Shown: positions 1-41,845 of the stretch, one piece after another
Layout: every line of letters starts with the position of its first letter
How positions within the stretch are numbered: the first letter of the stretch is position 1
NCBI RefSeq assembly: GCF_006345805.1
Contig: NC_043006.1
Span: 67,580,001 to 67,644,000 of the forward strand
From: Octopus sinensis
Lineage: Eukaryota
Length of the DNA stretch: 64,000 nucleotides
Direction of reading: 5' to 3'
Program-made: the position numbers and the translations under genes
The notes under the pieces: generated by a model
Told to the model about the DNA's origin: nothing
Seen by the model: only the letters and a program-made list of their open reading frames with translations
Databases searched by the model: none

Positions 1-505
1 CACCGGCACAGGTGCCAGTAAAGTGACGCTGGTAACGATCACACTCAAAAGGTGCCTTTTACATGCCACTGGCAAAGAAGCCATTTAGCCGCTCTGGCAA
101 TGATCACGCTCGGATGGTGCTCTTAGCACCCTACTAGCACAGGGCACAAGTGCCAGTAAGGTGACGCTGGTAACGATCACCCTCGAATGGTGCCTTTTAT
201 GTGCCCCTGGCATAGAAGCAGGTTAGCCATTCTGTCAACAATCACACTCGTATGGTGCTCTTTTCCACCCCACTATCACAGATGCTAGTCACCGAATTTG
301 ATTTTGATTTCACTTGCCTCAACAGGTTTAGTGTCCAAAGAAGGAAAAGGTACGCATAAGTGGGCTGGTTACGCCCCTGGCATAGGCCACAAGGTTATGG
401 TCTCATTTTGCTTGCCGGGTCTTCTCAAGCACAGCATATTTCCAAAAGTCACATTCACTAGTCATTTCCTTGGTGAGGCCTAAAGTTTGAAGGTCGTACT
501 TCAGC
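1..505 (-). mobile_element. RTE-clade LINE 3' fragment (end of RT ORF + repetitive 3' UTR)
   Basis: 466-505 matches the RT C-terminal DNA at about 7860-7905 (tcatttccttggtgaggcctaaagt). 1-330 matches the repetitive 3' UTR type seen at 6250-7750. Confidence 0.7.
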
Positions 506-954
506 ACTTGTTTCTGTCATTGAACTGTGGCTATGCTGGAGCATCACCTTGAAAGGTTTAGTTGAAGAAATCAACCCTAATATTATAAGACTAATACTTC
601 TTCTATTGGTCTCTTTTGCTAGACTAAGTTATGGGAATGTAGATAAACCAACACCCATTGTCAAGCAGTGCCACACAGTGAGACTGAACCCAGAACCATG
701 TGGTTGGGAAGCAAACTTCATATCAAACAGCCATGCCTCAATTTTGTATTCTTAATTCCAACTAATAAATGTGAGGGTAGGAACCCATGTATAAGGACCC
801 CTTTTTTGTCAAAAATTAGGTTTGAAAAAATGGGATTTTCTTATACATAGTATTATAATCCCTTACAAAACCTTTTTTCCAAATTTTAAACCCCAAAAAT
901 TAGGGGGTTCTTTATACACATTAAAATTTTAATAAGTAATAAAGTGACACAAAC

Positions 955-1055
955 CTCATTTTTTGGAATAATGGCCACCCAAGTTTCATGCACCATGTGG
1001 GTCCACTTGGCTTCCAATAAGACAGCAGCTTCAATGACAACAATATCTTTACCTT
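955..1055 (-). CDS. COASY: CoA synthase coding exon 7 (DPCK); gene continues beyond the left edge
   Basis: ttgttacag|AA (G+AA=Glu) [33 protein letters not shown]|gtttgt. Matches the DPCK motif vviDAavLlEagW...vheVW; phase 1-0. Confidence 0.94.
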
Positions 1056-1138
1056 CTGTAACAAAAATGAAAATGTTAAAATGTATCTATCTATGCAAGC
1101 ATATTGTAATAATAACAATAATAATAATAATAATATTA

Positions 1139-1174
<36 letters not shown>

Positions 1175-2935
1175 GGGTAGCATCATAACCATGTGTTGAG
1201 AGGGATTTTTTAGGGTTTGAATAATTCACCTCTGGAAACATGGGTGTTTTGTTCAACATCCTTAAACAACCCTTATTCAGGGACCTTTTGAGCGGGATGG
1301 GTTACTCGACAAGAAGAAAATTCTAACTGGGCCCCACCTGCAAGGTCATGTGCTGTTTATCTTGATATGAGATCACCATGTCGCGCACAAATGGTTGTGA
1401 TGCATGTGCCTGGTGTACCCTTATCAGATGGGTAGACATGATGGATATACTGAGCTTCATATATTTTACCCCAGTGTCACTTTGATGGCATGCACAGCTC
1501 TCTCACTCAATAATAATAATAATCCTTTCTACTGTAGGCACAAGACCTGAAATTAAGGGGAGGGGCTAGATGATTACATCGATCCAAGTACATAACTGGT
1601 ACTTATTTTATTGGTCCTGAAAGGATGGAAAATAGAGTCAACCTTGGTGGAATTTGAACTCAGAACTTAAAGAAGGACGAAATGCCGCTGTCATCCATAC
1701 ATACAGGTTTGTCCTTTACAGGTGCCAGTTCCACATAAAATGCACTCATGCCAGTGCTGCATAAATGTGCCCATGCTGGTGGCACGTAAAATGCACCCAG
1801 TACACTGTAAAGTGGTTGGTATTAGGAAGAGCATCCAGCCATAGAAACCATGCCAAACAAACAACTGGAATCTGGACAGCTCCTGCCAAACCATCCAACC
1901 CATGCCAGCATGGAAAACGGATGTTAAACGATAATGATTATGATTGCACCAAACAACATGCTTAGTGACATTTCTTCTGCTTTGTTTTTTTCGTTTACTT
2001 GTTTTAGTCATTTGACTGCGGTCAAACATACATACATATATTTTAATAATTATATACATAATTATAACAAGGGATAATGTCTCCATGTACTAGAAAAAAA
2101 TATTTGTGAAATTTACCTATAAGGTTTTTATTTCCGCACTGACCCCCTGGTAAAATCATTAATGATTTTACACTTTATTATAATACATATATATATATAT
2201 CACAGGCTTCTTTCAGTTTCCGTCAACCAAATCCACTCATAAGGCTTTGGTCGGTTCGAGGCTATAGAAGAAGACACTTTCCCAAGTTGCCATGCAGTGG
2301 GGCTGAACCTGGAACCATGTGGTTTGGAAGCAAGCTTCTTACCATATATATTCTTACCTATATATTCTGTATTTAATTCTGCCAAGGTCAACTTCACCCT
2401 TTTATCTTTCAAGGTCAATAAAATAAAGTACCAATCAAGTACTGCGGTGGATGTAACTATTTTCCAATTACAGATACGTTTAACGCCATCAATTCAGCAT
2501 GAAGAAAATTCAAAGACTCATTCAAGGTTACTATGAAGACAAATGCATCCGTGACTACATGCTTAGAATAGTGCATAACATCACTTATTAGAAATCTGGT
2601 TTACTTATTTGATTAAACTCATTAATCTTTCAAATCTTGTTGATTAAATTGATTGATTAAATCCATTTAGTTTTTGAATAATTTTTGGTAAGCATTTGTG
2701 CAGATGACATATATCAGCAAGTGAAAAACCAATGTGACCAATACCCAGGTTAGATATTCATACCAAATTACTTGTTCAGGATGTCTGGCATTGGTCCAGG
2801 AAAGTAACCTGAATACATAGATTTCTAACATAAACACAAACTTACAAATACATAGACTTGTAGCATAAAACACAATCACACAAATATAAAGGAAAATAAA
2901 CAGAAAGACGGGAAAGAAAAGTATGTGTCACCAAC

Positions 2936-3017
2936 CTTTTGCAAATTTGGCAATTTCCTCTTTGACAGCAGCTCCTATGGCAGGCCAAACCATACTGTTA
3001 AGTTGATGCAGTTTACT
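2936..3017 (-). CDS. COASY: CoA synthase coding exon 6, copy B (duplicate, 1631 bp from copy A)
   Basis: Same sequence and splice sites as 4567-4648, lying in the other unit of the tandem duplication. Confidence 0.88.
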
Positions 3018-4566
3018 CTGTTAGATGGATATACATGTATAAATAAATATATAAATGAACAAATACATCATCATCATCATTGTTTAACGTCTGTTTTCTA
3101 TGCTGACATGGGTTGGACGGTATAACTGAGGACTGGAGAGCCAGCAGCTGCACCAGGCTTCAATTTGATCCAGCAATGTTTCTACACCTGGATGTCCTTC
3201 CTAATGCCAACCACTCCGAGAGTGTAGTGGGTGCTTTCTACGCACCACCAGCACTGGAGCACAATGCAGTCCTTGAACCCATTGTATCTTTGTTAAACTG
3301 TCCGCCCCTTGGAACATGGATGTTAAATAATCATAATGATGATGATGATGATGGTGATGGTGATGATGATGATGATGATGATATATGCTGGTGCCACGTA
3401 AAAAGCAGTCAGTCCACTCTGATGGGTGGTTGGTGTAAGGAAGAGCATCCAGCCAGAAAAATCATGCCAAAACAGACACAGAAGTCTGGTGCAGTCTTAT
3501 GCCAGGCCAGCTCTTATCAAACCGTCCAACCCATGCCAGCATGGAAAACGGATGTTAAACGATAATGATTATGATTGCACCAAACAACATGCTTAGTGAC
3601 ATTTCTTCTGCTTTGTTTTTTTCGTTTACTTGTTTTAGTCATTTGACTGCGGTCAAACATACATACATATATTTTAATAATTATATACATAATTATAACA
3701 AGGGATAATGTCTCCATGTACTAGAAAAAAATATTTGTGAAATTTACCTATAAGGTTTTTATTTCCGCACTGACCCCCTGGTAAAATCATTAATGATTTT
3801 ACACTTTATTATAATACATATATATATATATCACAGGCTTCTTTCAGTTTCCGTCAACCAAATCCACTCATAAGGCTTTGGTCGGTTCGAGGCTATAGAA
3901 GAAGACACTTTCCCAAGTTGCCATGCAGTGGGGCTGAACCTGGAACCATGTGGTTTGGAAGCAAGCTTCTTACCATATATATTCTTACCTATATATTCTG
4001 TATTTAATTCTGCCAAGGTCAACTTCACCCTTTTATCTTTCAAGGTCAATAAAATAAAGTACCAATCAAGTACTGCGGTGGATGTAACTATTTTCCAATT
4101 ACAGATACGTTTAACGCCATCAATTCAGCATGAAGAAAATTCAAAGACTCATTCAAGGTTACTATGAAGACAAATGCATCCGTGACTACATGCTTAGAAT
4201 AGTGCATAACATCACTTATTAGAAATCTGGTTTACTTATTTGATTAAACTCATTAATCTTTCAAATCTTGTTGATTAAATTGATTGATTAAATCCATTTA
4301 GTTTTTGAATAATTTTTGGTAAGCATTTGTGCAGATGACATATATCAGCAAGTGAAAAACCAATGTGACCAATACCCAGGTTAGATATTCATACCAAATT
4401 ACTTGTTCAGGATGTCTGGCATTGGTCCAGGAAAGTAACCTGAATACATAGATTTCTAACATAAACACAAACTTACAAATACATAGACTTGTAGCATAAA
4501 ACACAATCACACAAATATAAAGGAAAATAAACAGAAAGACGGGAAAGAAAAGTATGTGTCACCAAC

Positions 4567-4648
4567 CTTTTGCAAATTTGGCAATTTCCTCTTTGACAGC
4601 AGCTCCTATGGCAGGCCAAACCATACTGTTAAGTTGATGCAGTTTACT
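4567..4648 (-). CDS. COASY: CoA synthase coding exon 6, copy A (first encountered in transcription)
   Basis: ctaacag|SKLHQLNSMVWPAIGAAVKEEIAKFAK-G|gttggt. Matches the DPCK segment L..L..I.WP.I; 82 nt, phase 0-1. Not in the ORF track. Confidence 0.88.
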
Positions 4649-6073
4649 CTGTTAGATGGATATACATGTATAAATAAATATATAAATGAACAAATACATC
4701 ATCATCATCATTGTTTAACGTCTGTTTTCTATGCTGACATGGGTTGGACGGTATAACTGAGGACTGGAGAGCCAGCAGCTGCACCAGGCTTCAATTTGAT
4801 CCAGCAATGTTTCTACACCTGGATGTCCTTCCTAATGCCAACCACTCCGAGAGTGTAGTGGGTGCTTTCTACGCACCACCAGCACTGGAGCACAATGCAG
4901 TCCTTGAACCCATTGTATCTTTGTTAAACTGTCCGCCCCTTGGAACATGGATGTTAAATAATCATAATGATGATGATGATGATGGTGATGGTGATGATGA
5001 TGATGATGATGATATATGCTGGTGCCACGTAAAAAGCAGTCAGTCCACTCTGATGGGTGGTTGGTGTAAGGAAGAGCATCCAGCCAGAAAAATCATGCCA
5101 AAACAGACACAGAAGTCTGGTGCAGTCTTATGCCAGGCCAGCTCTTATCAAACCGTCCAACCCATGCCAGCATGGAAGGCAGATGTATGATGATGATGAC
5201 AGACAATGTTGATGGTGACAACAGCAATGATATATATATAAGTGTGGTAACATAAACAGGGAAAACAGAACTCAAAACATGAGTATATAGGCACAGAAGT
5301 GGCTGTGTGGTAAGTAGCTTGCTTACCAACTAAATGATTCTGGGTTCAGCCCCACTGCATGGCACCTTGGGTAAGTGTCTTCTACTACTGAAACAAGTAA
5401 GAAGAAAAAAAAAAGAATATGTATATAATCATTTTATTATTCTAAGTCAACAGAAGTTACAAAGTGACTCAAGGACCAACAGTTTCATACATGGCAATTA
5501 TCAAATTGTGGTAAGTGCCATGCACAAAGCTCTCGGCCCTTTTGGTTACGTTTGAACTCAACAGCATATGATTGGTAATTCAGGACAATAGCGCCATTGA
5601 GGAAGCCTCAACACATTTGCTCAATATGCTGGATATAGCTGATAAATTCCCTCAAATTAAATCCTACCATCTTAAAAAGTGGATGGACACGTTGGATAAT
5701 AAGCACCTTCCTGGGTCATATAGATTCATAGGGCTGGTTCCTTGGATTCTATAAGATAAGATTCTATAGATAAGCATTACTTTCGACAGAGTAATCTAAA
5801 TGCTAAAGGATTAAAAATGCATCTTGCACAGTTAGGGAATATATGGAGCTGAACAACGGTGTACTGTTCTAAATACATTAATTCCTTCCTCTCTGTTAGG
5901 AACCAAAAGCACTTACACATACATATACACACACGACAGGAACTTCCGACTACCAAATTCAATCACAAGGCTTTAGTTGGTTCGAGGTTATAGCAGAAGA
6001 AACTTGAAGGCAAGTGTCTTCTACTATAGCCTTGGGTGGATTTGGTAGATGGAAACTGAAAGAAGCCCATCGT

Positions 6074-8350
6074 ATCATCATCATCATCATCATCATCATC
6101 ATTTAACGTCCGCTTTCCATGCTAGCATGGGTTGGACGGTTCAACTGGGGTCTGGGGAGCCCGAAAGCTGCACCAGTCCAGTCAGATCTGGCAGTGTTTC
6201 TACAGCTGGATGCCCTTCCTAACGCCAACCACTCCGAGAGTGTAGTGGGTGATTTTATGTGCCACCGACACAGGTGCCAGACGAGGCTGACAAACGGCCA
6301 CGCTCGGATGGTGTTTTTATGTGCCACCGACACAGGTGCCAGACGAGGCTGGCAGACGGCCACGCTCGGATGGTGTTTTTATGTGCCACCGACACAGGTG
6401 CCAGACGAGGCTGGCAGACGGCCACGCTCGGATGGTGTTTTTATGTGCCACCGACACAGGTGCCAGACGAGGCTGGCAGACGGCCACGCTCGGATGGTGT
6501 TTTTATGTGCCACCGACACAGGTGCCAGATGAGGCTGGCAAACGGCCACGATCGGATGGTGCTTGTTACGTGCCCACAGCACGGAGGCCAGTCGATGCGG
6601 TACTGGCTACGGCCACGTTCGGATGGTTTTCTTATGTGCCACGTGCCACCGGCACTGGTACCACAAAGATACAAATTCCATTGATGTTCATCTATTTTGA
6701 TTTGTTTTGATTTGATTTGATTTTCACTTGCCTCAACAGGTCTTCACAAGTGTCACAAGAAGGAAGGTATGCACAGGTGGACTGACTACGTCCCAGGTAG
6801 GGGCCATGGGCTATGGCCTGACTAGTCTTGCCGGGTCTTCGGATGGTGTTTTTATGTGCCACCGACACAGGTGCTAGATGAGGCTGGCGAACGGCCACGA
6901 TCGGATGGTGTTTGTCATGTGCCCACCGCACTGACTACGGCACTGATGGATTCTTGTGTGCCACAGGCACTGGTACCACAAGATACAAATTCCATTGATG
7001 TTCATCTATTTTGTCTATTTTGATTTGATTTGATTTGATTTTCACTTGCCTCAACCGGTCTTCACAAGTGTCACAAGAAGAAGGAAGGTATGCACAGGTG
7101 GACTGACTAGTCTTGCCGGGTCTTCGGAAGGTGTTTTTATGTGCCACCGACACAGGTGCCAGATGAGGCTGGCGAACGGCCATGATCGGATGGTGTTTGT
7201 TACGTGCCCACAGCACGGAGGCCGGTCGATGCGGAACTGGCTACGGCCACGTTCGGATGGTTCTCATGTGTGCCACCGGCACTGGTACCACAAAGTGTGT
7301 GCCACCGGCACTGGTACCACAAGCGGTACTGACTACGGCCACGTTCGGATGGATTCTTGTGTGCCACTGGCACTGGTACCACAAGGATACAAATTCCATT
7401 GATGTTCATCTATTTTGATTTGTTTTGATTTGATTTGATTTGATTTTCACTTGCCTCAGCAGGTCTCACAAGTCGGAAGGTATGTACAGGTGGACTGACT
7501 ACGTCCCAGGTAGGGCCCACGGGTTATGACCTGACTAGTCTTGCCGGGTCTTCGGATGGTGTTTTTATGTGCCACCATGTTCCCACAGCACGGAGGCCAG
7601 TCGGTGCGGTACTGGCTACGGCCACGTTCGGATGGTTTTCTTGTGTGCCACAGGCACTGGTACCACAAAGATACAAATTCCATTGATGTTCATCTATTTT
7701 GATTGATTTTCACTTGCCTCAGCAGGTCTTCACAAGTGTCACAAGAAGGAAGGTATGCACAGGTGGATCGACTACGTCCCAGGTAGGGGCCACGGGATAT
7801 GGCCTGACTAGTCCTGCCGGGTCCTCTCATGCACAGCACACTTCCATAGGACTCGGTCTTCAGTCATTTCCTTGGTGAGGCCTAAAGTTCGAAGGTCGTG
7901 CTTCACCACCTCGTCCCAGGTTTTCCTGGGTCTACCTCTTCCACAGGTTCCCTCAACTGCTAGGTTGTAGCACTTTTGCACACAACTATCTTCAGCCATT
8001 CTCGTCACATGACCATACCAGCGCAGCCGTCTCTCTTGCACACCACAACTGACACTTCTTAGGTTCAACTTTTCTCTCAAAGTACTTACACTCTGACGAT
8101 TATGAACACTGACATTACACATCCATCGGAGCATACTGGCTTCATTTCTTGCAAGCTTACGCATATCCTCAGCTGTCACGGCCCATGTTTCACTACCATG
8201 TAGCATGGCTGTACGTACACATGCATCATATAGTCTGCCTTTTACTCTTAGTGAGAGACCTTTTGTCACCAGCAGGGGTAAGAGCTCTCTAAACTTTGCC
8301 CAGGCTATTCTTACTCTAGCAGTTACACTTTCAGCACACCCACCCCCGCT
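6074..8350 (-). mobile_element. 5'-truncated RTE-clade LINE with tandem-repeat-expanded 3' UTR, inserted into a SINE
   Basis: ORF 7808-8350 contains ARVRIAWAKFRELLPLL...KGRLYDACVRTAMLHGSETW...RRLRWYGHV...GRGRPRKTW (RTE RT C-terminus). Ends in a (TGA)n tail at 6074-6101. SINE halves flank it at about 5990-6073 and 8351-8590. Confidence 0.9.
6259..6568. repeat. 62-bp minisatellite, about 5 copies, inside the RTE 3' UTR
   Basis: Unit gtgccaccgacacaggtgccagacgaggctggcagacggccacgctcggatggtgtttttat recurring at 6259, 6321, 6383, 6445, 6507. Confidence 0.92.
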
Positions 8351-8707
8351 ACATGTATATATATATGTATGTGTGTCTATATGTTTGTGTGTCTGTGTTT
8401 GACCCCCAACATCGCTTGACAACCAATGGTGGTGTGTGTTTACATCCCTGTAACTTAGCAGTTTGACAAAAGAAACCAATAGAATAAGTACTAGGCTTAC
8501 AAGGAGTAAGTCCTGGGGATCGATTTGCTCGACTAAAGGCAGTGCTCCAGCATAACCGCAGTCAAATGATTGAAACAAGTAAAAGAGTAAAAGGTACTAT
8601 GCAGTGGGACTGAACCCAAGACCATGTGGCTGGGAAGCAGGTTTCCTAACCACACAGCTATACCTGCGCCTATCTAGAAAAAAGTAATCAGTCACTATAA
8701 AACTGAC

Positions 8708-8835
8708 CTTATCTGAGAAGACAATCTTCCCCAATGAAGACCGCTGGATTTCTCCATTTGATGCCAGAATTTCCTTACCAAAATATTCCACAATTTGATG
8801 ATAGACAGGAGTATCTTTGATGTACACTTGGTGAC
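8708..8835 (-). CDS. COASY: CoA synthase coding exon 5 (DPCK)
   Basis: ccttcctag|(G)HQVYIKDTPVYHQIVEYFGKEILASNGEIQRSSLGKIVFSDK|gtcagt. 128 nt, phase 1-0. Confidence 0.95.
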
Positions 8836-9401
8836 CTAGGAAGGAGAAAGAGAAGGTTTTATAATGCGAGTGCTAGAGAGGGGGAAAGAGATAGAGGAGG
8901 GAAGAGAGAGAGGAAAGGCTGAGAGATTGCAGTACTTATGGTACTTCTGATCATTGATAAAAATGTTGTGCTTTAGAAGTCATAACTATATTTCTATTAT
9001 TGAAAACCAGTGGATGTATTCCACTGAATTTAGGTAAATAATCCTTTGAACGGACACTCAGTAGCGACACCAGCCTTGTTCGGCTGCTCTACATTGATAA
9101 GGGGCAAATACCCTGAAACTAGTCTGTAGATGCCAGACCAGCAAGGGGAAGCGGCTAACCTCCCCTGTTCAAAGGCTATAATGAACACAGGTTCATGTGT
9201 CAAATAGCTAGCTAGAGGTGATGGCCTCTTGGAGCTAATGAATGGCAGCATTCGTCCTATTTTTCTGTACTGCCATGTTAGCTTCGTGATAACTATTAAT
9301 ACATATATATATATATTACTCATAAAATACAGTGTACATTTATACACATAAGAGGAATCCACTTATGGGATTCAACACACTAGAAAGAACAGCTAGGTTC
9401 T

Positions 9402-12253: not shown

Positions 12254-13744
12254 CCCTTTTGTTACCGTATATATTTTGAGATGCTCTGTGTTTCTTTCAA
12301 TTGATTTTAAATATAACAAAGAATTTAGTAAAATAACTTAGTTATCATTAAGCTAGTGTTAGGAACATAAATTGTGAGTAAAGTTTGGTGGAAGATTTTA
12401 ATTCAAAATTCATGAAAACAAGACATTTGTAGTACAGAGCCAGAGGCGGTTTCAGCCAGGTTGGTATCAAAAGGGTTAAATTAGTCATTTGTTAACCCAT
12501 TTTTTGTTACCGTATTTATTTTGAGATGCTCTGTGTTTCTTTCAATTGATTTTAAATATAACAAAGAATTTAGTAAAATAACTTAGTTATCATTAAGCTA
12601 GTGTTAGGAACATAAATTGTGAGTAAAGTTTGGTGGAAGATTTTAATTCAAAATTCATGAAAACAAGACATTTGTAGTACAGAGCCAGAGGCGGTTTCAG
12701 CCAGGTTGGTATCAAAAGGGTTAAATTAGTCATTTGTTAACCCATTTTTTGTTACCGTATTTATTTTGAGATGCTGTGTTTCTTTCAATTGATTTTAAAT
12801 ATAACAAAGAATTTAGTAAAATAACTTAGTTATCATTAAGCTAGTGTTAGGAACATAAATTGTGAGTAAAGTTTGGTGGAAGATTTTAATTCAAAATTCA
12901 TGAAAACAAGACACTTGTAGTACAGAGTCAGGGGCGGTTTCAGCCAGGTTGGTATCAAAAGGGTTAAATTAGTCATTTGTTAAATTAATCATTTGTTAAC
13001 CCTTTGTTACTGCATTTATTTTGAGATGCTATGTGTTTCTTTCAATTGATTTTAAATTTAACAAAGAATTTAGTAAAATAACTTAGTTATCATTAAGCTA
13101 GTGTTAGGAACATAAATTGTGACTTAAAGTTTGGCGGAAAATTTTAATTCAAAACTTATGAAAACAAGACATCTGTGCCACAGAGCCAGAGGCGGTTTCA
13201 GCTAGGTTGGTATCAAAAGGGTTAAATTAGTGATTTGTTAAATTAATCATTTGTTAACCCTTTTTTTGTTACCGTATTTATTTTGAGATGCTCTGTGTTT
13301 CTTTCAATTGATTTTAAATATAACAAAGAATTTAGTAAAATAACTTAGTTATCATTAAGCTTAGTGTTAGAAATATAAATTGTGACTAAAGTTTGGTGGA
13401 AGATTTTAATTCAAAATTCATGAAAACAAGACATTTGTAGTACAGAGCCAGAGGCGGTTTCAGCCAGGTTGGTATCAAAAGGGTTAAATTAGTCATTTGT
13501 TAAATTAATCATTTGTTAACCCTTTGTTACCGCATTTATTTTGAGATGCTATGTGTTTCTTTCAATTGATTTTAAATTTAACAAAGAATTTAGTAAAATA
13601 ACTTAGTTATCATTAAGCTAGTGTTAGGAACATAAATTGTGACTAAAGTTTGGCGGAAAATTTTAATTCAAAATTTATGAAAACAAGACATCTGTGCTAC
13701 AGAGCCAGAGGTGGTTTCAGCTGGGTTGGTATCGAAAGGGTTAA
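12254..13744. mobile_element. Tandem array of six about 225-bp piggyBac-like MITEs
   Basis: Units run TTAA-CCC(T/A)TTT.GTTAC...GGTATCAAAAGGG-TTAA (unit 1 lacks the left TTAA). Starts at about 12254, 12496, 12741, 13000, 13258, 13520; short spacer ATTAGTCATTTG. Confidence 0.82.
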
Positions 13745-21465: not shown

Positions 21466-22155
21466 CGCGTGTGTGTGTGCGCGTGTGTGTGTGTGTGTGT
21501 GCGTGAGTGTGTGACAGGAAAGTTTTTTACGACGAATATAAGACCTATATCCAAGTAGCAGAAAGATCGCCCAAAAGTGTATATAGATATTTAAATGTAT
21601 TTATATATTCATCTATACACAGATGTATGTATAATGTGTGTGTATATATTTCTATAGACGTAACCATTCACTCCACACAAAGCTTTTTAGGACGAAAATA
21701 AGATCTAAAGTTATCTCTAAGTAGCACAAAGATCGCCCAAAAGTGTATATAGATATATAAATGTATTATATATTCATCTATGCACACATGTATGTATAAC
21801 GTGTGTGTATATATTTCCATAGAGGTAACCATTCACTCCATACAAAGGTTTTTAGGACGAAAATAAGATCTAAAGTTATCTCTAAGAAACAGAAAGATCG
21901 CCCAAAAGTGTATATAGATATTTAAATGTATTATTATATTTCATCTACACACATGTATGTATAATGTGCGTGTATATATTTCCATAGAGGTAAAAGTGAA
22001 AGTAATTCACTTTCTGTAGTGAGTGACTCTTTCACTCTGCCTCCCACTTCTTCTTTACACACATAGACACGCAAATATATAAATAAAATTGTAAGCTAAC
22101 GTGCGTGTGGGTGTTTGTGTGTGTGTGTGTGCGTTGTGTGTGTGTGAGGGTGCGC

Positions 22156-22186
<31 letters not shown>

Positions 22187-24235
22187 AGTGTGTGACAGGA
22201 AAGTTTTTTAGGACGAATATAAGACCTATATCCAAGTAGCAGAAAGATCGCCAAAAGTGTATATAGATATTTAAATGTATTTATAAGTATATACAAGTAG
22301 CAGAAAGAAAGATCGCCCAAAAGTGTATATAGATATTTAAATGTATTTATATATTCATCTATACACAGATGTATGTATAATGTGTGTGTATATATTTCTA
22401 TAGACGTAACCATTCACTCCGCACAAAGGTTTTTAGGACGAAAATAAGATCTAAAGTTATCTCTAAGTAGCACAAAGATCGCCCAAAAGTGTATATAGAT
22501 ATATAAATGTATTTATATATTCATCTATGCACACATGTATGTATAACGTGTGTGTATATATTTCCATAGAGGTAACCATTCACTCCATACAAAGGTTTTT
22601 AGGACGAAAATAAGATCTAAAGTTATCTCTAAGAAACAGAAAGATCGCCCAAAAGTGTATATAGATATTTAAATGTATTTATATATTCATCTATACACAC
22701 ATGTATGTATAATGTGCGTGTATATATTTCCATAGAGGTAAAAGTGAAAGTAATTCACTTTCTGTAGTGAGTGACTCTTTCACTCTGCCTCCCACTTCTT
22801 CTTTACACACATAGACACGCAAATATATAAATAAAATTGTAAGCTAACGTGCGTGTGTGTGTGTGTGTGCGTCTGTGTGTGTGTGAGGGTGCGCGTGTGT
22901 GTGTGTGTGTGCGTGAGTGTGTGACAGGAAAGTTTTTTAGGACAAATATAAGACCTATATCCAAGTAGCAGAAAGATCGCCCAAAAGTGTATATAGATAT
23001 TTAAATGTATTTATAAGTATATACAAGTAGCAGAAAGATCGCCCAAAAGTGTATATAGATATTTAAATGTATTTATATATTCATCTATACACAGATGTAT
23101 GTATAATGTGTGTGTATATATTTCTATAGACGTAACCATTCACTCCGCACAAAGGTTTTTAGGACGAAAATAAGATCTAAAGTTATCTCTAAGTAGCACA
23201 AAGATCGCCCAAAAGTGTATATAGATATATAAATGTAGTTATATATTCATCTATGCACACATGTATGTATAACGTGTGTGTATATATTTCCATAGAGGTA
23301 ACCATTCACTCCATACAAAGGTTTTTAGGACGAAAATAAGATCTAAAGTTATCTCTAAGAAACAGAAAGATCGCCCAAAAGTGTATAGATATTAAATGTA
23401 TTTATATATTCATCTATACACACATGTATGTATAATGTGCGTGTATATATTTCCATAGAGGTAAAAGTGAAAGTAATTCACTTTCTGTAGTGAGTGACTC
23501 TTTCACTCTGCCTCCCACTTCCTCTTTACACACATAGACACGCAAATATATAAATAAAATTGTAAGCTAACTTGTGTGTGTGTGTGTGTGTGTGTGCGTC
23601 TGTGTGTGTGTGAGGGTGTGCATGTGTGTGTGTGTGTGTGTGCGTGAGTGTGTGACAGGAAAGTTTTTTACGACGAATATAAGACCTATATCCAAGTAGC
23701 AGAAAGATCGCCCAAAAGTGTATATAGATATTTAAATGTATTTATAAGTATATACAAGTAGCAGAAAGATCGCCCAAAAGTGTATATAGATATTTAAATG
23801 TATTTATATATTCATTTATACACAGATGTATGTATAATGTGTGTGTATATATTTCTATAGACGTAACCATTCACTCCGCACAAAGGTTTTTAGGACGAAA
23901 ATAAGATCTAAAGTTATCTCTAAGTAGCACAAAGATCACCCAAAAGTGTATATAGATATATAAATGTAGTTATATATTCATCTATGCACACATGTATGTA
24001 TAACGTGTGTGTATATATTTCCATAGAGGTAACCATTCACTGCATACAAAGGTTTTTAGGACGAAAATAAGATCTAAAGTTATCTCTAAGAAACAGAAAG
24101 ATCGCCCAAAAGTGTATATAGATATTTAAATGTATTTATATATTCATCTATACACACATGTATGTATAATGTGCGTGTATATATTTCCATAGAGGTAACC
24201 ATTCAATCCATACAAAGTTTTTTAGGACGAAAATA
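21310..24235. repeat. Higher-order tandem repeat: 4 units of about 690-750 bp, each a (TG)n-bearing head + three about 165-bp monomers
   Basis: Anchor actttctgtagtgagtga at 21321, 22009, 22757, 23480. Monomer anchor aagatcgcccaaaagtg spaced 165-166 bp. Confidence 0.9.
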
Positions 24236-24481
24236 TTTATATATAAAAGAAAGGTTGTGTGTCTGTCTACTCCGATTTAGATTCCTAACTACTCCCACAT
24301 TTTGCGATGCAGTTTAACCAAAACCGGGTATCTTATAGTCGTGATTCATATCGAGCCCTTCTGGGTATTAGCGCGCGTCTACAATGAGTCTATGATTTTA
24401 CAAATAATTTACCATCATTTTTTTCCATTTTAATGCATATTTTTTTAATAAAGGGAAGTAACTCTCAAACTTCACACCAAT

Positions 24482-25003
24482 ATGCGTGCTCATATGCGAC
24501 GTAATATCACATCAGCAGCATTTCCTCACACCCTCCTTGCACTTGGCGAAGGCAAAATACCAGGGGATGAAAATGGTAATATTGCCATCGATTCCATTTG
24601 TACCATTGTTAAGACGCCTTCTGATCTCAGAGATGCAGTGTTCCCAGATCTACAAGCTAATTATCAGAATATGGATTGGATTGGCAAAAAGGCTATACTG
24701 GCCCCGAGGAATAAAACTGTTCACCATATTAATGATGAAATGCTAAAACTCATTCCTGGGGAAGTCTATGTATATCAGTCTATCGATACAACTCCTGACC
24801 CAGAGGACGTCATCAACTATCCAATAGAGGTACTCAATTCCTTTGAGTACCCCGGACTACCACCACACTTTCTCAAACTTAAAGTTGGTGCCCCTATAAT
24901 GCTCATCAGAAATTTGGTTCCCCCAAAACAATGCAATGGCACACGTTTGATCGTTAAGTCCTTATCTCCCACCGTAAGCTTATATCAATATTTGTCTGAA
25001 TAA
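24482..25003 (+). pseudogene. Helitron RepHel Pif1-family helicase C-terminal fragment
   Basis: Conserved motifs ILAPRN, PPH.L.LKVGAPIML.RNL, CNGTRL.V; truncated at both ends. Confidence 0.9.
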
Positions 25004-25246: not shown

Positions 25247-25279
<33 letters not shown>

Positions 25280-25280
<1 letters not shown>

Positions 25281-26303
25281 CTCTTATGATAAAAGCAGAT
25301 TTTCTCTGCCTGTTCCCATGTTCCTTTTTAATACAATTCTACAATATAGAATTTCTTCAATTAGAATTTACCTATGATTTTTCGAAGTAGATTCGATTGG
25401 GTCATGGCATATAAAGTTTTTTCAATTTGACCCCCAATTAAGCAAAAATTCGAGAAAAGTAATATTTTACGATTTGCCTCTCTAATTTCAACTGCTTCAC
25501 TCCTGCTATTACCATACTTTCTCCTACTTTCTCTTTGCAAGTGTACCTTAAACCACTACTCAAAAAAAATACAGAGCAAACAAACAATAAATACATAATG
25601 ATTTACTCCTCACAGAATTTCTTCAATTGGAATTTACCTATGATTTTTCGAATACATTCCATTCGGTCATGGCATATAAATTTCTTTCAATTTGACCCCC
25701 AATTAAGCAAAAATTTGAAAAAACTCAATATTTTACGATTTCCCTCTCTCACTTCAAAGGCTTACTCCGCCTATTAGCACACTTTCTCTTTACACACATA
25801 GACATGCAAACATATACATATATGACAGTGTCAATTGTTGAAAGAAAATTGTAAGCTAAGAAGGTGTGTGTGTGTGTGTGCGTGTGTGTGTGTCTGTGTG
25901 TGTGTATGTATGTGTATTAATGTGTGTGTGTTATCTCTCTACATATAAAGCTGAAGTTGTCTGTGTGCGCCAGGTTTGGTAGCCTTCAACTAACACTATC
26001 TCCTCCGAGACCCTGCGGCACAAGTTGACCAAAATTGAGAGTATGATAGAAGGGTTGCTCTTCCTTCCGTAGAAGATAAAATTCAAATCGGACCATGTTA
26101 ACAGCAAAAATTATTTACATCAAAAAGGTGCTTTTTTCTATGAAAATCCCTATTTTTTACGATTTTTTCACTGCTGACACGCAACCAGAAAAATGTTCAC
26201 TTGAAGAGAATAACAAGCTACATAATGCAAAATTTTTACTTTTCAAAAATTCCAATTCCAGCAGGTCGAAACAAACCCGAGCAACGCCGGGCGATACTGC
26301 TAG
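25280..26303 (+). mobile_element. Non-autonomous Helitron, copy 1
   Basis: A|TCTCTTATGATAAAAG start, second TC-type start at 25934, 3' hairpin cccgagcaacgccggg + CTAG|T. Confidence 0.78.
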
Positions 26304-26344
26304 TATATATATATATATATAATATATATATATATGTATATATA

Positions 26345-27385
26345 TCTCTTATGATAAAAGCAGATTTTCTCTGCCTGTTCCCATGTTCCTTTTTAATACA
26401 ATTCTACAATATAGAATTTCTTCAATTAGAATTTACCTATGATTTTTCGAAGTAGATTCGATTGGGTCATGGCATATAAAGTTTTTTCAATTTGACCCCC
26501 AATTAAGCAAAAATTCGAGAAAAGTAAATATTTTACGATTTGCCTCTCTAATTTCAACTGCTTCACTCCTGCTATTACCATACTTTCTCCTACTTTCTCT
26601 TTGCAAGTGTACCTTAAACCACTACTCAAAAAAAATACAGAGCAAACAAACAAATAAATACATAATGATTTACTCCTCACAGAATTTCTTCAATTGGAAT
26701 TTACCTATGATTTTTCGAATACATTCCATTCGGTCATGGCATATAAATTTCTTTCAATTTGACCCCCAATTAAGCAAAAATTTGAAAAAACTCAATATTT
26801 TACGATTTCCCTCTCTCACTTCAAAGGCTTACTCCGCCTATTAGCACACTTTCTCTTTACACACATAGACATGCAAACATATACATATATGACAGTGTCA
26901 ATTGTTGAAAGAAAATTGTAAGCTAAGAAGGTGTGTGTGTGTGTGTGTGCGTGTGTGTGTGTCTGTGTGTGTGAGAGAGTGTGTGTGTATGTATGTGTAT
27001 TAATGTGTGTGTGTTATCTCTCTACATATAAAGCTGAAGTTGTCTGTGTGCGCCAGGTTTGGTAGCCTTCAACTAACACTATCTCCTCCGAGACCCTGCG
27101 GCACAAGTTGACCAAAATTGAGAGTATGATAGAAGGGTTGCTCTTCCTTCCGTAGAAGATAAAATTCAAATCGGACCATGTTAACAGCAAAAATTATTTA
27201 CATCAAAAAGGTGCTTTTTTCTATGAAAATCCCTATTTTTTACGATTTTTTCACTGCTGACACGCAACCAGAAAAATGTTCACTTGAAGAGAATAACAAG
27301 CTACATAATGCAAAATTTTTACTTTTCAAAAATTCCAATTCCAGCAGGTCGAAACAAACCCGAGCAACGCCGGGCGATACTGCTA

Positions 27386-27386
<1 letters not shown>
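26345..27386 (+). mobile_element. Non-autonomous Helitron, copy 2 (near-identical, head-to-tail)
   Basis: ORF pairs 26095/27178 and 26201/27284 offset by 1083; same termini. Confidence 0.78.
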
Positions 27387-27419
<33 letters not shown>

Positions 27420-28596
27420 TGAATATACTGAACTCCAGAACAGATTTTCAAGCTTTGTTTCCATTTCAGGAGATTCCTATTAGCATTTTGGAAACCACAT
27501 AACGATAATAGCGGTATTAATGATAACATTTACACCATGGCTGGAAATTGATTGCTGATGAGAGTGGGAGATAACCCCCTGCTTTCTACCCTCACAGCTG
27601 ACAGGTGGCATAGCTGAAGGAGGACGACATAGCCAGAAACTGATAACCACCAGAAGAGGGAGACAACACTCATTGTTTATATCCAGTTCATTTTCCCCTC
27701 CATACTTTAAAGAGGCCATAGGACAACAAGTCTTAGGGTCTGATGACACATCATAAAGATACTCTTTATGGCAAGAAACCCAAGGGTAACCCTGTAAACA
27801 GGCCTTCACCAGTAAAAACATATATATATATATAAAACAAGAAACTGGAAAATTTTCGGTATAATTTATTAATCATTACACTTATTTCATTTGCTAATAG
27901 GAGTTATGAAACTGTACATGTAGGGGAAACAGGTAAGATATATCTCCTCTTTGAAATTCTTCAGACAGATTAATCAAATGAAACATGTGCAATGATGAAT
28001 ATAACCAAAAATTTTTCCAATCTTCTGTTTTAATAAGTAGCCACTCTGCAAAAAACATTAGCAGTATTTTTCAACTCTTATGCACACCTCTTGTGTACAA
28101 TTTTGAAGTATTGGAATAAGCAAAAGTGCTTCAAGAGGACACAGCTTGGATTATAAACCTTCCAACATACTATCATCATCATCATCATTTGACATCTGCT
28201 TTCCATGCTGCCATGGGTTGAATGGTTTGACTGAAAACTGATGAGCCAGGGAGCTGCACCAGGTTCCAACCTGATTTGGTATGGTTTCTACGATAAATCT
28301 ATTTATCTATCTATATATAGATACAGTAATCCCTTGACTATTGCAGATGTTACACTCCAAAACCTTGTGATAGGTGAAAATCCACAAAGTAGAAACAGTA
28401 GTGTATATTTTGTATTATTATTTATATAATTTGTATAAATTTATTTTATTATAAATGCAAAACAACACCACGGAGGAATCGACATAAGCTTAAATAATAA
28501 ACCATGATATGCAAAGGATTACTGTATATATATATATATATTATGGAGATGTACTTGCATAGCAAGTGACCTGATCTGAGATCATGTGCTGGAACG

Positions 28597-29397: not shown

Positions 29398-30103
29398 TTG
29401 CAGCAAAGTTGTCATCTGTTACTCCAATCATGACAGCACGGGACGAGAGGAGACACGCCTGGGTGAGCAACACTTTGTGTCCTGCATGCAACCGGTCGAA
29501 GGTTCCACCCAGCACGACATGGTCATATGTGGTCATTACCACTGAGGCTACTCCTGAAGTGTCTTCAGTTGTTCTCGGTGAGGCATCATCGTTCAATGGC
29601 GTTTGGGGTAAGGGAAGAGGCACAATGTTCTCAAAATTTTGACCCAGATCACACTTGGGAAAACAATGTGCAACATCATGCAAGAATCTGTTTTTGTGGT
29701 TGGCGTCAGACGTAATAAAATCATGCAGTATGATGTCAAAGTTCCTCAAAGACTGGTAAGTTTGGTCTTGCCCAGATGATGAAGTTGTAGTTTTTGTAAC
29801 CACAGGATCAGGTACGGGGGCAGCACCAAAAGAATCTAAGATGATCCGAAGATCTATTTGTTTGAATAAAGCAGCATTGGTCTGATAGAATTGTTGCATC
29901 AGGTGGAAGGCATCTTCTGTTGGTGCGACATGCTGCAGCTTAAACACTGCAGCAGAACTGGGTGTTGAAGGCTTTTGCATTGGCTGAAGTTGGATATAGA
30001 GCGAGTTCTTTGCATATTGTTTAGTTGCCTGCAAGATTGCATGTACCTTTGATTTCAACTTTGGAATCGGTGAAGTAAGTAACAACAACACAGAACGAGA
30101 CAT
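29398..30103 (-). CDS. COASY: CoA synthase coding exon 1 (N-terminal region + start of PPAT domain)
   Basis: ATG at 30103 gives MSRSVLLLLTSP...LYIQLQP, resembling the metazoan COASY N-terminus. Contains VLGGTFDRLHAGHK (HxGH nucleotidyltransferase motif). Donor GCAA|gtaatt at 29397, phase 1. Upstream acceptor with a long pyrimidine tract at 30174. Confidence 0.95.
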
Positions 30104-39527: not shown

Positions 39528-41845
39528 TTTTTTTTCTTTCTCACACGGAGACAACAAAGAGGGGACGTTACAATCTGATATGGGGTCAGATTTCTCGTAT
39601 GAGTTAACAAAAAGATGAATTTTAAAATTTTACATAAATATGAATAGTTCGAATAATAACATATACTAGACAACAATACAGAATGGAGTGAGGGGGGCGG
39701 GATATGCTCTGACCCTATGAGCCCCGTCTCAAATCTGATGCTTTGGTTCGTCCTGTGTTGTATTTATGTGGTTCCATCCATACGCAACATTCGTGCAACA
39801 TTCTTCCATCGATCTTGGAACATTTTCGCGGACAGGCATTTTTTCTCTGACCCTATTTTCCTTCTTAGGTGGAAGGTAAAGAAATTCACCAACCCAGGGC
39901 CAGAGATAAAAATGCCTGTTATTAACCCTTTCATTCGCGTCTTCCTAATCACCTCTCTCGCAATTGCTACTACGATGAGAAAGCAATTCTTACCTTCTTT
40001 CGATAGGAAATCCGGTGGGTCAATTTTTCCTATTAACTCAGTCGATAGCTGTACTCTTCCTGTACTTGACAACAGTTGTTCGGCATAAACCCACACATCT
40101 GACACCCCCGAACACTGAACAATAGCGTGCGGGACGGTTTCCCTGTCCCGCCCACATCTTGGACAGGTCGGTGAGCCAGGATCACCATGCCTTGCGAGCT
40201 TGTTTCGGACAAGTAAGTCTCCTCAGTACCATTGCCATGCCAAAGACTTCTGGCAGTTATCCAGTGTCTTCGGCCCGAATGTACATTGGAACAGACTGGC
40301 CAGCTGATTATCGTCGAGACCTAGGGCTTCCCCCAAAGTATCATCACAGTTCGCTTCAACCAACCCTCTATAGAAGAATGTGGTAGAACCACTACTGCAG
40401 GCGTTGCCCGAGAGATGGAATATCTGGAGAGCCTTACGACACTCCGTAAACCATGTATCCAACTTCGATCTACGATAGAACCAGGTATCCAGTCCACCGA
40501 AACAAGTAAACTTGGGAAACATCTGTTTCGCCAGCGGAGACCACACCCGGTCACCATCCAGATGGAGCCACAGATGCCTCAACCACAGCGCGTGCCTGCG
40601 CATCATCAGCCAAGGCATCCCTGGTTGTTGGCAGCAAATAGAGCGTCTCACAAGCGGATTCGAACCCTTCCACAAGAAGCAGAAGAGCTGTCTTTCTAAC
40701 TTGCTCAACCACGAATCAGGGCAGGGAACGACGGTTAGGCGGTAGGTGATGACCGATGTGATGAACACATTGACTACCTCCGCCCTCCCTTTCAGGGATA
40801 GCCACTGCCAAGACCAGGTCTTGGCTATGTGGGGCACCCTGCTCGCTACCTCGGCCCAGTTCTTCTCTATTTGGAGGCCTGGTCCAAACCAGACGCCTAG
40901 CAACTTAATTGGACTCTCCGTCCAACGTTCCATGACGCTGTCAGGAGGCATCGACTTGCCTCTCCAGGTGCCGAGCTGCAAGCCGACTGACTTTTCACGA
41001 TTAACCTTTGCTCCTGCTACCGTATCGTATTCCTCAATGGCTCTGCCTACTCTCTGTAGGTGATCCATTTCAGTTATGATGATGGTGATGTTGTCCGCGT
41101 ACGCTGAAATCGACTCTCCACAACTTAGCTGTCTTGTGATGTTGCTCAATTTTCGCAGCAATGGCTCAAGAGCCATTACGTACAAAAGCGGAGAGAGCGG
41201 ACACTCTTGACGAACCGAGCGTTTGATGCTGAACGGCTTAGATGGAAACCCGTTCACCCGTCCTACCAAGTCGATGTTGTGATAAATTTCAATGATCCAC
41301 CTGAGGAAGCCAAGGCCCAGACCGGACACCAGATAATGATGGTCGACTCTATCAAAAGCCTTTGCTTGGTCTAAATGGACCACTGCCCCTCCCTTACCAG
41401 AACTGTTATTAAACCCCACTACAGTGTACCATATAAGATGGAGATTATCCTGGATGGATCTACCGGGAACGGCACATATCTATCATTCCCGATCAAGCCA
41501 TCTGCGATGCGCGCCAACCTTTTCGATAACACTTTGGCCAAAATCTTCAACTCTGTGTTTAGCAGAGTGATGGACTGAAAATTATCAATGCAATCCCCCT
41601 TGTGCGGATCCTTTCTGACAAGCGTCACCACTCTCCGGCGCACAGATCTAGGAATGAACCCATTCTGCTGCAAGATCGTGTAGACATTCACCAGCAGGTG
41701 ACCGAACAAGTCCTGCATACTTTTATACAGTTCATAGGGTAGACCATCCAGTCCCGGCGCCTTACGCGTGCCGCAGTCCGCCATAGCCTCAATTACATCC
41801 TCAGGTGTGATCGGCCCTTCACAACGCTCCGCGTCCTGCCCCGAT
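39528..41845 (-). mobile_element. 5'-truncated L1/Tx1-type LINE, frameshifted RT
   Basis: KAPGLDGLPYELY, ITLLNTELKILAKVLSKRL, HLDQAKAFDRVDH, VRQECPLSPLLY, YADN, KLLGVWFG. C-terminal piece at 39764-40105; A-rich tail near 39528. Confidence 0.88.

What the first reader, a model, noticed from the sequence alone, without database searches (positions are those of the whole stretch)
1895..5176. A frame-breaking COASY coding exon is present twice in an apparently identical 1631-bp tandem duplication
Seen in sequence: exon 6 (82 nt, phase 0-1) occurs at 4567-4648 and 2936-3017 with the same splice sites. Joining both copies reads G|AG TAA, i.e. Glu then stop, which truncates the dephospho-CoA kinase domain. 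The junction at about 3526 is chimeric: its left side matches the LINE-tail copy at about 5157 and its right side matches the copy at about 1895, the signature of unequal crossing-over between two repeat ends. Known: COASY performs the last two steps of CoA synthesis. Inference: if the duplication is real, transcripts must use exactly one copy (mutually exclusive splicing) or be degraded by NMD, which would make it a newborn exon duplication or a segregating low-function allele. An assembly artefact is a serious alternative because I see no differences between the copies.
Basis: partly seen in the sequence, partly recalled or inferred. Interest (0 to 1): 0.78.

Follow-up and report, generated by a model that had tools for sequence, protein, structure and literature searches.

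The report
Perfect tandem duplication of octopus COASY exon
A 1.6-kb piece of an octopus coenzyme-A synthase gene, carrying one 82-base coding exon, is present twice back to back without a single difference; it is either a very young repeat-mediated duplication that would break the gene if both copies are spliced in, or an assembly error, and the sequence alone cannot tell which.

Summary
Window 1894-3546 is identical to 3525-5177, a 1653-nt run at offset 1631. Each unit carries the 82-nt COASY exon 6 (4648-4567 and 3017-2936, minus strand) with identical AG/GT sites. Splicing both in gives G|AG TAA, a stop after residue 468. The junction repeat is a chimera of the two flanking SINE-like copies. 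The breakpoint lies in their longest shared block, 22 nt.

The gene belongs to the Octopus vulgaris group. The window differs by about 0.7% from the public reference chromosome OX597822.1. I could not read the exon-6 region of that reference.

My best reading (about 0.55) is a real, very young, SINE-mediated tandem duplication of the Alu/Alu-rearrangement kind. It is probably heterozygous or rare, and mainly a loss-of-function (NMD) allele.

The rival (about 0.35) is an assembly artefact. A graph loop through the 22-mer, traversed twice, gives exactly the same sequence, so the chimeric junction does not discriminate. Against an artefact, the usual hallmarks of false duplications (a gap, or haplotype or error differences between copies) are absent, and the window is gap-free.

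Functional mutually exclusive splicing is unsupported. Spanning long reads would decide.

The parts
1894..3524 (.). Duplication unit A (1631 bp)
   Evidence: Exact identity with 3525-5155
3525..5155 (.). Duplication unit B (1631 bp)
   Evidence: Exact identity with 1894-3524
1894..1915 (.). 22-nt shared block S in the left (L-type) SINE-like copy. This is the left breakpoint microhomology.
   Evidence: (D11). It is the longest exact block shared by the L and R copies.
3525..3546 (.). 22-nt block S at the duplication junction
   Evidence: It has R-type sequence on its left (3505-3524 = 5136-5155) and L-type on its right (3547-3568 = 1916-1937).
5156..5177 (.). 22-nt block S in the right (R-type) SINE-like copy. 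The perfect match ends here.
1773..1938 (-). Left flanking SINE-like copy (L type)
   Evidence: Alignments. About 75% identical to the R copy.
3385..3569 (-). Chimeric SINE-like copy at the junction: R-type body, L-type (CAT)n-proximal end
5016..5197 (-). Right flanking SINE-like copy (R type)
4567..4648 (-). COASY exon 6, upstream copy (6a). 82 nt, phase 0 to 1. Encodes SKLHQLNSMVWPAIGAAVKEEIAKFAK of the dephospho-CoA kinase domain.
2936..3017 (-). COASY exon 6, downstream copy (6b), identical to 6a
3013..3015 (-). TAA stop created if 6a is spliced to 6b (G|AG TAA). It lies 77 nt upstream of the 6b-7 exon junction.
8708..8835 (-). COASY exon 5 (ends in phase 0)
955..1055 (-). COASY exon 7 (starts in phase 1). 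The rest of the gene lies beyond the window start.
3066..3300 (+). Internal, oppositely oriented SINE-like copy just upstream (in the gene's sense) of exon 6b. With 3385-3569 it forms a long inverted repeat.
   Evidence: Fold of 3040-3580: -218.8 kcal/mol, z = -12.
4697..4931 (+). The same internal SINE-like copy in unit B, upstream of exon 6a. It pairs with 5016-5197.
   Evidence: (D9, D10)

Best explanation
This is most likely a real, very recent tandem duplication of 1631 bp inside the COASY gene of an Octopus vulgaris-group animal.

Inferred origin: the ancestral allele had exon 6 flanked by two same-orientation SINE-like copies, about 75% identical. Strand exchange or a template switch within their longest identical stretch (22 nt, 55% G+C) joined the right copy to the left copy. 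That left a chimeric SINE at the junction and two identical copies of exon 6 with identical introns.

Predicted consequence: both copies have the same splice sites and are separated by a normal-sized 1549-nt intron, so the default outcome is inclusion of both. That shifts the frame and stops translation at once (…FAKE*, residue 468). The C-terminal third of the dephospho-CoA kinase domain is lost and the mRNA becomes an NMD target. Only transcripts that happen to skip exactly one copy encode normal enzyme.

The allele would therefore be a loss-of-function or strongly hypomorphic variant of an essential gene. I expect it to be heterozygous in the sequenced animal and rare in the population.

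Shown here: the sequence anatomy, the reading frames and the domain loss. Inferred: that the duplication exists in DNA, the formation mechanism, the splicing outcome, NMD and zygosity.
For: 1. The duplication has the anatomy of a repeat-mediated rearrangement. It is head-to-tail with no filler bases. There are direct-orientation homologous repeats at both ends. The chimeric repeat is in register, and the breakpoint lies in the longest identity block of the pair. Song et al. (PMC6071635) describe the same picture for Alu/Alu-mediated rearrangements: a chimeric element at the junction, microhomologies mostly under 25 bp and G+C-richer than the element.

2. The substrate is abundant. The SINE core occurs 10 times in 64 kb, and SINEs make up 11.6% of the O. 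vulgaris genome (PMC13282606).

3. The hallmarks of false duplications listed by Ko et al. (PMC9516828) are absent where they can be tested. There is no gap between the copies and no N in the window. There are no haplotype-type or error-type differences between the copies.

4. The 64 kb are gap-free and resolve several tandem arrays whose copies differ. This points to a long-read assembly, in which a 3.3-kb structure lies inside single reads. That it is a long-read assembly is my inference.

5. Kb-scale tandem copy-number differences between haplotypes occur in this same gene. Against the public reference (L001), the window has 2 versus 1 copies of a 1.08-kb unit, about 3.6 versus about 2 copies of a 742-bp unit, and 6 versus 5 copies of a 245-bp unit.

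6. One exon-6 copy gives a colinear DPCK domain whose invariant L, V, W and P residues lie in exon 6. Two copies give a stop.
Against: - No read, depth or second-assembly evidence for the junction could be obtained.
- There are zero differences in 1631 bp, including four microsatellite tracts per unit. The other young tandem duplication in this window already differs at microsatellites and short A-runs. Perfect identity is exactly what an artefact gives.
- A duplication that breaks an essential single-exon frame is selected against. Artefacts are blind to function, so the frame-breaking content raises the relative odds of an artefact.
- The public annotation's 319-aa product fits a CDS with one exon 6. 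That is also expected if an annotator simply skipped a copy.
Confidence: 0.55

Rival explanations
1. Assembly artefact. The true allele has one unit (L-S-I-S-R). The assembler, a contig-merging or gap-closing step, or a polisher went round the S-I loop twice, or joined two overlapping contigs through the 22-nt SINE match instead of through the full 1653-nt overlap.
For: The two copies are identical at all 1631 aligned positions, microsatellites included. A loop through the shared 22-mer reproduces the observed sequence exactly, chimeric junction included (logic). The junction lies in about 500 bp of pure repeat (SINE, (ATG)n, SINE; 3066-3569), the kind of place where assemblies go wrong. The content is functionally implausible as a fixed state, because a frameshift in COASY is a recessive disease gene in humans (PMC11187879, PMC10054636). 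The reference annotation's 319-aa product fits a single exon 6.
Against: A 22-nt overlap can only mislead a de Bruijn or overlap step working at k of 22 or less, which is unusual. The window has no N, and it resolves arrays with 2-7% inter-copy differences, which argues for long reads that span the whole structure. There is no gap, no haplotype k-mer differences and no error-type differences between the copies, all typical of false duplications (PMC9516828).
Confidence: 0.35
2. Newborn functional exon duplication. The duplication is real and tolerated, even when homozygous, because transcripts take exactly one copy. Competing pairings among the inverted SINE copies loop out one exon, and NMD removes the double-inclusion products.
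For: Exon length is not divisible by 3, as in 60% of human mutually exclusive clusters (PMC5740500). Three forward and two reverse SINE copies surround the two exons. All forward/reverse duplexes are about equally stable, -199 to -209 kcal/mol, including those that would loop out 6a or 6b. That geometry is the one Ivanov and Pervouchine propose to arise automatically from tandem duplication (PMC6071210). Exon 6 has a purine-rich acceptor region (11/20 pyrimidines) and a non-consensus GTTGGT donor.
Against: The copies encode the same peptide, so there is no isoform gain. The adjacent hairpins (f1-r1, f2-r2) are transcribed first and leave both exons exposed, so kinetics favour double inclusion. 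That kinetic argument is my inference. The 1549-nt intron rules out a steric block, and identical GT-AG sites rule out splice-site incompatibility. There are no RNA data.
Confidence: 0.07
3. The duplication is real but arose only in the DNA sample: somatic, mosaic, or created during library preparation by template switching between SINE copies. It is not a germline allele.
For: Perfect identity and the microhomology junction are compatible with a very late event. Polymerase template switching prefers just such short identical blocks. This is inference.
Against: A consensus assembly needs the majority of reads at a locus. Rare chimeric molecules would not win the consensus.
Confidence: 0.03

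Closest known systems
Alu/Alu-mediated (SINE-mediated) intragenic rearrangements in humans (AAMR; Song et al. 2018, PMC6071635)
   Same: Two same-orientation SINE copies flank the segment. A chimeric SINE sits at the junction. The breakpoint lies in a short (22 nt), relatively G+C-rich identity block. The event is kb-scale, and an intragenic exon duplication gives a frameshift.
   Different: The element is an unclassified octopus SINE-like repeat with a (CAT)n end, not Alu. The flanking copies are only about 75% identical. The event is a duplication, whereas the best-studied set is deletions. Existence in DNA is not verified.
Tandem exon duplication giving mutually exclusive exons (Hatje et al. 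2017, PMC5740500; Ivanov and Pervouchine 2018, PMC6071210)
   Same: Tandem exons of the same length and phase. Joint inclusion breaks the frame. The duplicated introns carry complementary segments that can form competing pairings.
   Different: The copies are identical, so no alternative protein arises. There is no evidence that exactly one copy is used. No enforcing mechanism exists other than the frameshift itself.
False duplications in genome assemblies (Ko et al. 2022, PMC9516828)
   Same: Adjacent duplicated genic sequence that would create a false exon gain.
   Different: There is no gap between the copies, and neither haplotype-specific nor error-type differences. The copies are tandem and in register at a repeat. 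Depth and read-pair criteria could not be tested.
Human COASY loss-of-function and hypomorphic alleles (CoPAN, PCH12; PMC11187879, PMC10054636)
   Same: A truncation within the DPCK domain of the bifunctional PPAT/DPCK enzyme. It would be expected to be recessive and deleterious.
   Different: The species is different and there is no phenotype or expression data. Here the lesion would be a splicing-dependent frameshift from an exon duplication.

Membership tests
SINE-mediated (AAMR-type) tandem duplication | Homologous repeats in direct orientation at both breakpoints of the inferred ancestral allele | tested here: met
   The L copy (1773-1938) and the R copy (5016-5197) are both on the minus strand and 75% identical.
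SINE-mediated (AAMR-type) tandem duplication | Chimeric repeat at the junction, in register, with microhomology at the switch point and no inserted bases | tested here: met
   3505-3524 is R type, 3525-3546 is the shared 22 nt, and 3547-3568 is L type. The exact period is 1631.
SINE-mediated (AAMR-type) tandem duplication | The junction exists in genomic DNA (spanning reads, PCR) | not testable with these tools
   No reads are available. The second assembly's locus ends at window 9238. The metagenome scan was empty.
Mutually exclusive exon cluster | Tandem homologous exons of equal length and phase | tested here: met
   The two 82-nt exons are identical, phase 0 to 1.
Mutually exclusive exon cluster | Copies diverged so that they encode alternative peptide versions | tested here: not met
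   0 differences.
Mutually exclusive exon cluster | A mechanism preventing joint inclusion: steric (short intron) or splice-site incompatibility | tested here: not met
   The intron between the copies is 1549 nt, and both copies have the same AG/GT sites.
Mutually exclusive exon cluster | Competing docking/selector RNA pairings | tested here: inconclusive
   Equally stable alternative SINE-SINE duplexes exist, -199 to -209 kcal/mol, along with local hairpins. Any effect on splicing is untested.
Mutually exclusive exon cluster | Transcripts contain exactly one copy | not testable with these tools
   No RNA data. The reference's 319-aa product is compatible with one copy in the CDS.
False duplication (assembly artefact) | Assembly gap or unsupported sequence between the copies | tested here: not met
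   There is no N in the window. The junction is a clean in-register SINE.
False duplication (assembly artefact) | Haplotype-specific (heterotype) or error-type (homotype) differences between the copies | tested here: not met
   The copies are identical.
False duplication (assembly artefact) | Half or low read depth and discordant read pairs | not testable with these tools
   No reads.
COASY (bifunctional PPAT/DPCK) | An N-terminal cytidylyltransferase-like domain with the HxGH motif followed by a CoaE domain with a P-loop, in one gene | tested here: met
   PF01467 on exon 1 (GGTFDRLHAGH) and PF01121 at 4.6e-38 on exons 4-7. The 501-aa open model has canonical splice sites. 100% match to an O. 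vulgaris protein named bifunctional coenzyme A synthase.

The most novel reading that the evidence does not exclude
This could be a tandem exon duplication caught at time zero, with no divergence at all, in which the duplicated inverted SINE copies already set up competing RNA pairings. Most transcripts would then take exactly one of the two identical exons, and NMD would clear the rest. That would be a natural snapshot of how mutually exclusive exon clusters are born, as proposed by Ivanov and Pervouchine, in an essential gene of a cephalopod.
Probability: 0.07. Interest if true: 0.65.

Novelty: new member of a known kind. Interest (0 to 1): 0.3.

Why it matters
If real, this is an ordinary kind of event (repeat-mediated intragenic duplication) seen unusually fresh. 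It would show that the very SINE-rich octopus genome produces Alu-like exon-level structural variants, and it would be a probable recessive loss-of-function allele of an essential CoA-synthesis gene carried by a reference animal.

It would also offer a clean test of what the spliceosome does with two identical exons, which bears on how mutually exclusive exons originate.

If it is an artefact, it matters only as a warning. It would produce a false truncated or oddly spliced COASY model, and it shows that a chimeric repeat junction is not proof of a biological crossover.

Tried and rejected
1. Looking for the same locus elsewhere.
- The DPCK query found no cephalopod protein; the best hit was Mytilus at 58%.
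- The N-terminal query found one O. vulgaris protein and hence locus L001. The 10-kb flank ends at window 9238, short of exon 5.
- A third protein search, with the start of the reference's 319-aa product, found nothing.
- An exact 37-mer of exon 6 is absent from the metagenome collection.

2. Naming the repeat.
- No paper contains the SINE strings.
- There was no Rfam hit and no tRNA in 1-9000.
- The family remains 'unclassified SINE-like'.

3. Explanations considered and rejected.
- Heterotype false duplication (two haplotypes laid in tandem): there are no differences and no gap.
- Unmerged contig overlap at arbitrary contig ends: the junction is in register inside homologous repeats. Such an overlap is possible only as the special 22-mer merge described under the artefact rival.
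- Steric or U2/U12 mutual exclusion: the intron is 1549 nt and the sites are identical.

4. A first gene-model script had two exon ends off by one. This was corrected.
Full report
**Observation**

A scan of offsets shows a single outstanding exact run: 1653 nt at offset 1631, starting at 1894. Neighbouring offsets give at most 19 nt. A direct comparison confirms that 1894-3546 equals 3525-5177.

The structure is two 1631-bp units, 1894-3524 and 3525-5155, followed by 22 nt (5156-5177) that repeat the first 22 nt of the unit. The window contains no N.

On the minus strand each unit holds the same 82-nt exon, at 4648-4567 and 3017-2936. It is preceded by ...tccatctaacag and followed by gttggtga.

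**The gene**

tblastn with PPAT/DPCK proteins from other animals, plus inspection of splice sites, gives eight in-window exons. All have AG/GT boundaries:

| Exon | Coordinates (minus strand) |
|---|---|
| E1 | 30103-29398 |
| E2 | 19513-19299 |
| E3 | 16728-16588 |
| E4 | 10653-10524 |
| E5 | 8835-8708 |
| E6a | 4648-4567 |
| E6b | 3017-2936 |
| E7 | 1055-955 |

- With one copy of exon 6 the reading frame is open for 501 aa and runs off the window.
- Exon 1 carries the cytidylyltransferase HxGH motif (PF01467). Exons 4-7 match CoaE (PF01121) at 4.6e-38 over profile positions 1-133 of 180.
- In an alignment with seven dephospho-CoA kinases the one-copy translation is colinear. Four invariant residues (L, V, W, P of LNSMVWP) lie in exon 6.
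- With both copies the junction reads AAG|AGTAAA, that is G|AG TAA. The product stops after residue 468 (…IAKFAKE*).
- With neither copy the frame is also lost.

**The boundaries**

The unit begins and ends inside copies of a dispersed, ORF-less repeat of about 170-250 bp that ends in a (CAT)n/(ATG)n tract. Its 22-nt core occurs 10 times in the window, against 0 expected. No Rfam family or tRNA matches it. I call it SINE-like; I saw nothing that makes it a LINE tail.

- The left copy (L, 1773-1938) and the right copy (R, 5016-5197) have the same orientation and are about 75% identical.
- Their longest identical block is TCCAACCCATGCCAGCATGGAA, 22 nt and 55% G+C. The next longest is 18 nt.
- The junction copy is R-type up to this block and L-type after it (family D11).
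- Deleting either unit restores a pure L copy and a pure R copy. That is the inferred ancestral allele.

**Source and an independent copy of part of the locus**

- The exon-1 peptide is 100% identical to a 244-aa protein named bifunctional coenzyme A synthase isoform X1 [Octopus vulgaris].
- That protein is encoded on OX597822.1 of GCA_951406725.2, at 42,757,826-42,786,837 with flanks (locus L001).
- L001 aligns colinearly to window 9238-38530, but with 201 mismatches in about 28.9 kb (0.7%) and 82 indels, mostly at microsatellites.
- The window is therefore another haplotype, individual or sister taxon, not that assembly. The reported heterozygosity of O. vulgaris is 1.22% (PMC10700109).
- L001 ends about 400 bp before exon 5, so the exon-6 region of the reference could not be read.
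- The reference carries a second ORF of 319 aa that starts at MRMNSV in E2. The window encodes 254 aa from that Met with one exon 6. The remaining ~65 aa are about what the homologues carry beyond the last in-window residue. So the reference CDS fits a single exon 6. This says nothing about genomic copy number there.

**Age, if the duplication is real**

- Zero differences in 1631 aligned positions gives an upper 95% bound of about 0.18% divergence.
- At the 0.7% seen between the two assemblies, about 11 differences would be expected (probability of none about 1e-5).
- Each unit also contains four microsatellite tracts, (TA)11, (ATAA)7, (CAT)5 and (ATG)16, with identical lengths in both units.
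- Microsatellites are the commonest differences between the window and L001.
- A real duplication would therefore be much younger than the haplotype split. It would be a recent, probably rare variant.

**Real or artefact**

The chimeric junction does not discriminate. If the true allele is L-S-I-S-R, an assembly graph in which the two S blocks are merged contains a loop. Traversing that loop twice yields exactly the observed sequence.

For an artefact:
- Perfect identity, microsatellites included.
- The junction lies in about 500 bp of pure repeat (3066-3569).
- A functionally implausible content. Artefacts are blind to function, whereas real frame-breaking duplications in an essential gene are selected against.

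Against an artefact:
- A 22-nt overlap only misleads a step working at k of 22 or less.
- The 64 kb are gap-free and resolve arrays whose copies differ by 2-7%. I take this to indicate long reads that span the whole 3.3-kb structure.
- The testable hallmarks of false duplications are absent: a gap between the copies, and haplotype-type or error-type differences (PMC9516828).

Further support for a real event:
- The anatomy is that of Alu/Alu-mediated rearrangements: a chimeric element and microhomology mostly under 25 bp and G+C-rich. The proposed mechanisms are template switching, SSA or MMEJ rather than classical NAHR, because the elements are shorter than the minimal processing segment (PMC6071635).
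- SINEs make up 11.6% of this genome (PMC13282606).
- Tandem copy-number differences between the window and the reference occur three more times within this same gene:

| Tandem unit | Copies in window | Copies in reference (L001) |
|---|---|---|
| 1.08 kb | 2 | 1 |
| 742 bp | ~3.6 | ~2 |
| 245 bp | 6 | 5 |

I put the real duplication at about 0.55-0.6 (all real variants together about 0.65) and the artefact at about 0.35.

**Consequence, if the duplication is real**

- The two exons and their splice sites are identical.
- Intron lengths are 4059 nt (E5-E6a), 1549 nt (E6a-E6b) and 1880 nt (E6b-E7).
- This excludes steric mutual exclusion and splice-site incompatibility, two of the mechanisms considered for human clusters (PMC5740500).
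- The expected default is inclusion of both copies. The stop lies 77 nt upstream of the next exon junction, so the mRNA should be an NMD substrate. This rests on the established 50-55-nt rule in vertebrates and is unverified in molluscs.
- Any protein made would lack CoaE profile positions from about 105 onward.
- COASY catalyses the last two steps of CoA synthesis. Biallelic variants cause severe human disease (PMC11187879, PMC10054636). A homozygous state is therefore unlikely to be tolerated unless single-copy skipping is frequent.

Some skipping is conceivable:
- Exon 6 has a purine-rich acceptor region (11 of 20 pyrimidines) and a GTTGGT donor.
- Each exon copy is preceded by an inverted SINE pair that folds into a long hairpin (-218.8 kcal/mol, z = -12).
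- The three forward and two reverse SINE copies can form alternative duplexes of similar stability, -199 to -209 kcal/mol. Some of these would loop out 6a or 6b.
- That is the geometry from which Ivanov and Pervouchine derive mutually exclusive splicing after tandem duplication (PMC6071210).
- However, the local hairpins are transcribed first and leave both exons exposed. The copies also encode the same peptide, so nothing is gained. I give the functional newborn-exon reading about 0.07.

**Comparison and novelty**

The closest known kind is a SINE-mediated intragenic tandem duplication that causes a frameshift, well known from human disease alleles. Membership is met on all sequence features and untested on the one that matters, existence in DNA.

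It is not a member of the mutually exclusive exon class as defined, because the copies have not diverged and no enforcing mechanism is present.

At best it is a new member of a known kind, in a new animal group. At worst it is not a real feature.

**Test design**

- Junction reads exon 5-6 and 6-7 cannot tell the two copies apart.
- Only the 6-6 junction is diagnostic, and a circular RNA of a single exon 6 would mimic it.
- Spanning long DNA reads and exon 5-7 cDNA sizing are therefore the decisive tests.

Noticed in passing
window 25247-27427 (L001 12737-13861): A second young tandem duplication lies in COASY intron 1: two copies of about 1.08 kb bounded by (TA)n tracts. They are 98% identical, with 1 substitution and 7 indels at microsatellites and short A-runs. 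The public O. vulgaris reference has only one copy.
   Followed up: partly
window 21546-24198 and 12257-13744 (L001 15786-17287 and 24747-25995): Intronic tandem arrays with periods of about 742 bp and about 245 bp differ in copy number from the public reference: about 3.6 versus about 2 copies, and 6 versus 5.
   Followed up: partly
L001 13885-14705, against window 25247-25276: The reference carries an insertion of about 830 bp, with about 290-bp direct terminal repeats, inside the (TA)n tract. The window lacks it. It is probably a mobile element.
   Followed up: no
window 3040-3580 and 4671-5211, minus strand: Inverted SINE pairs form hairpins with arms of about 190 bp (-218.8 kcal/mol, z = -12), ending about 45 nt upstream of each exon-6 acceptor. 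Long intronic dsRNA of this kind could be an ADAR substrate or could favour exon looping or circularisation.
   Followed up: partly
window 29398-29405 (end of exon 1) and 19513; L001 10001-19012 and 19015 onward: The public annotation splits COASY into a 244-aa ORF and a 319-aa ORF. The 244-aa product (P0121) uses a GC donor (GCT|GCAAGT) 4 nt upstream of the GT donor (GCAA|GTAATT). That shifts the frame to GRSSVNYLSH*. The GT donor gives the full in-frame enzyme. This is either a real alternative donor or an annotation problem.
   Followed up: partly
window 10568 (exon 4, codon 29): There is a non-synonymous difference between the window (His, CKHLQ) and the public reference (Arg, CKRLQ) just after the P-loop of the kinase domain. 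Arg is commoner among homologues, but the position is variable.
   Followed up: no
window 6248-6642: A 62-bp tandem array (6.3 copies, 91% matches) continues from the head of a SINE-like copy. Related 280-350-bp repeats extend to about 7830.
   Followed up: no
window 24452-25000 (+), 39767-41859 (-), 46424-46972 (-), 54955-58800 (+), 7811-8596 (-): Decayed mobile-element coding fragments: a Pif1-helicase 2B domain (Helitron-like), reverse transcriptase (RVT_1), a DDE_3 transposase, and two related LINE-like ORF runs. One LINE 3' fragment lies in the intron just downstream of exon 5.
   Followed up: partly
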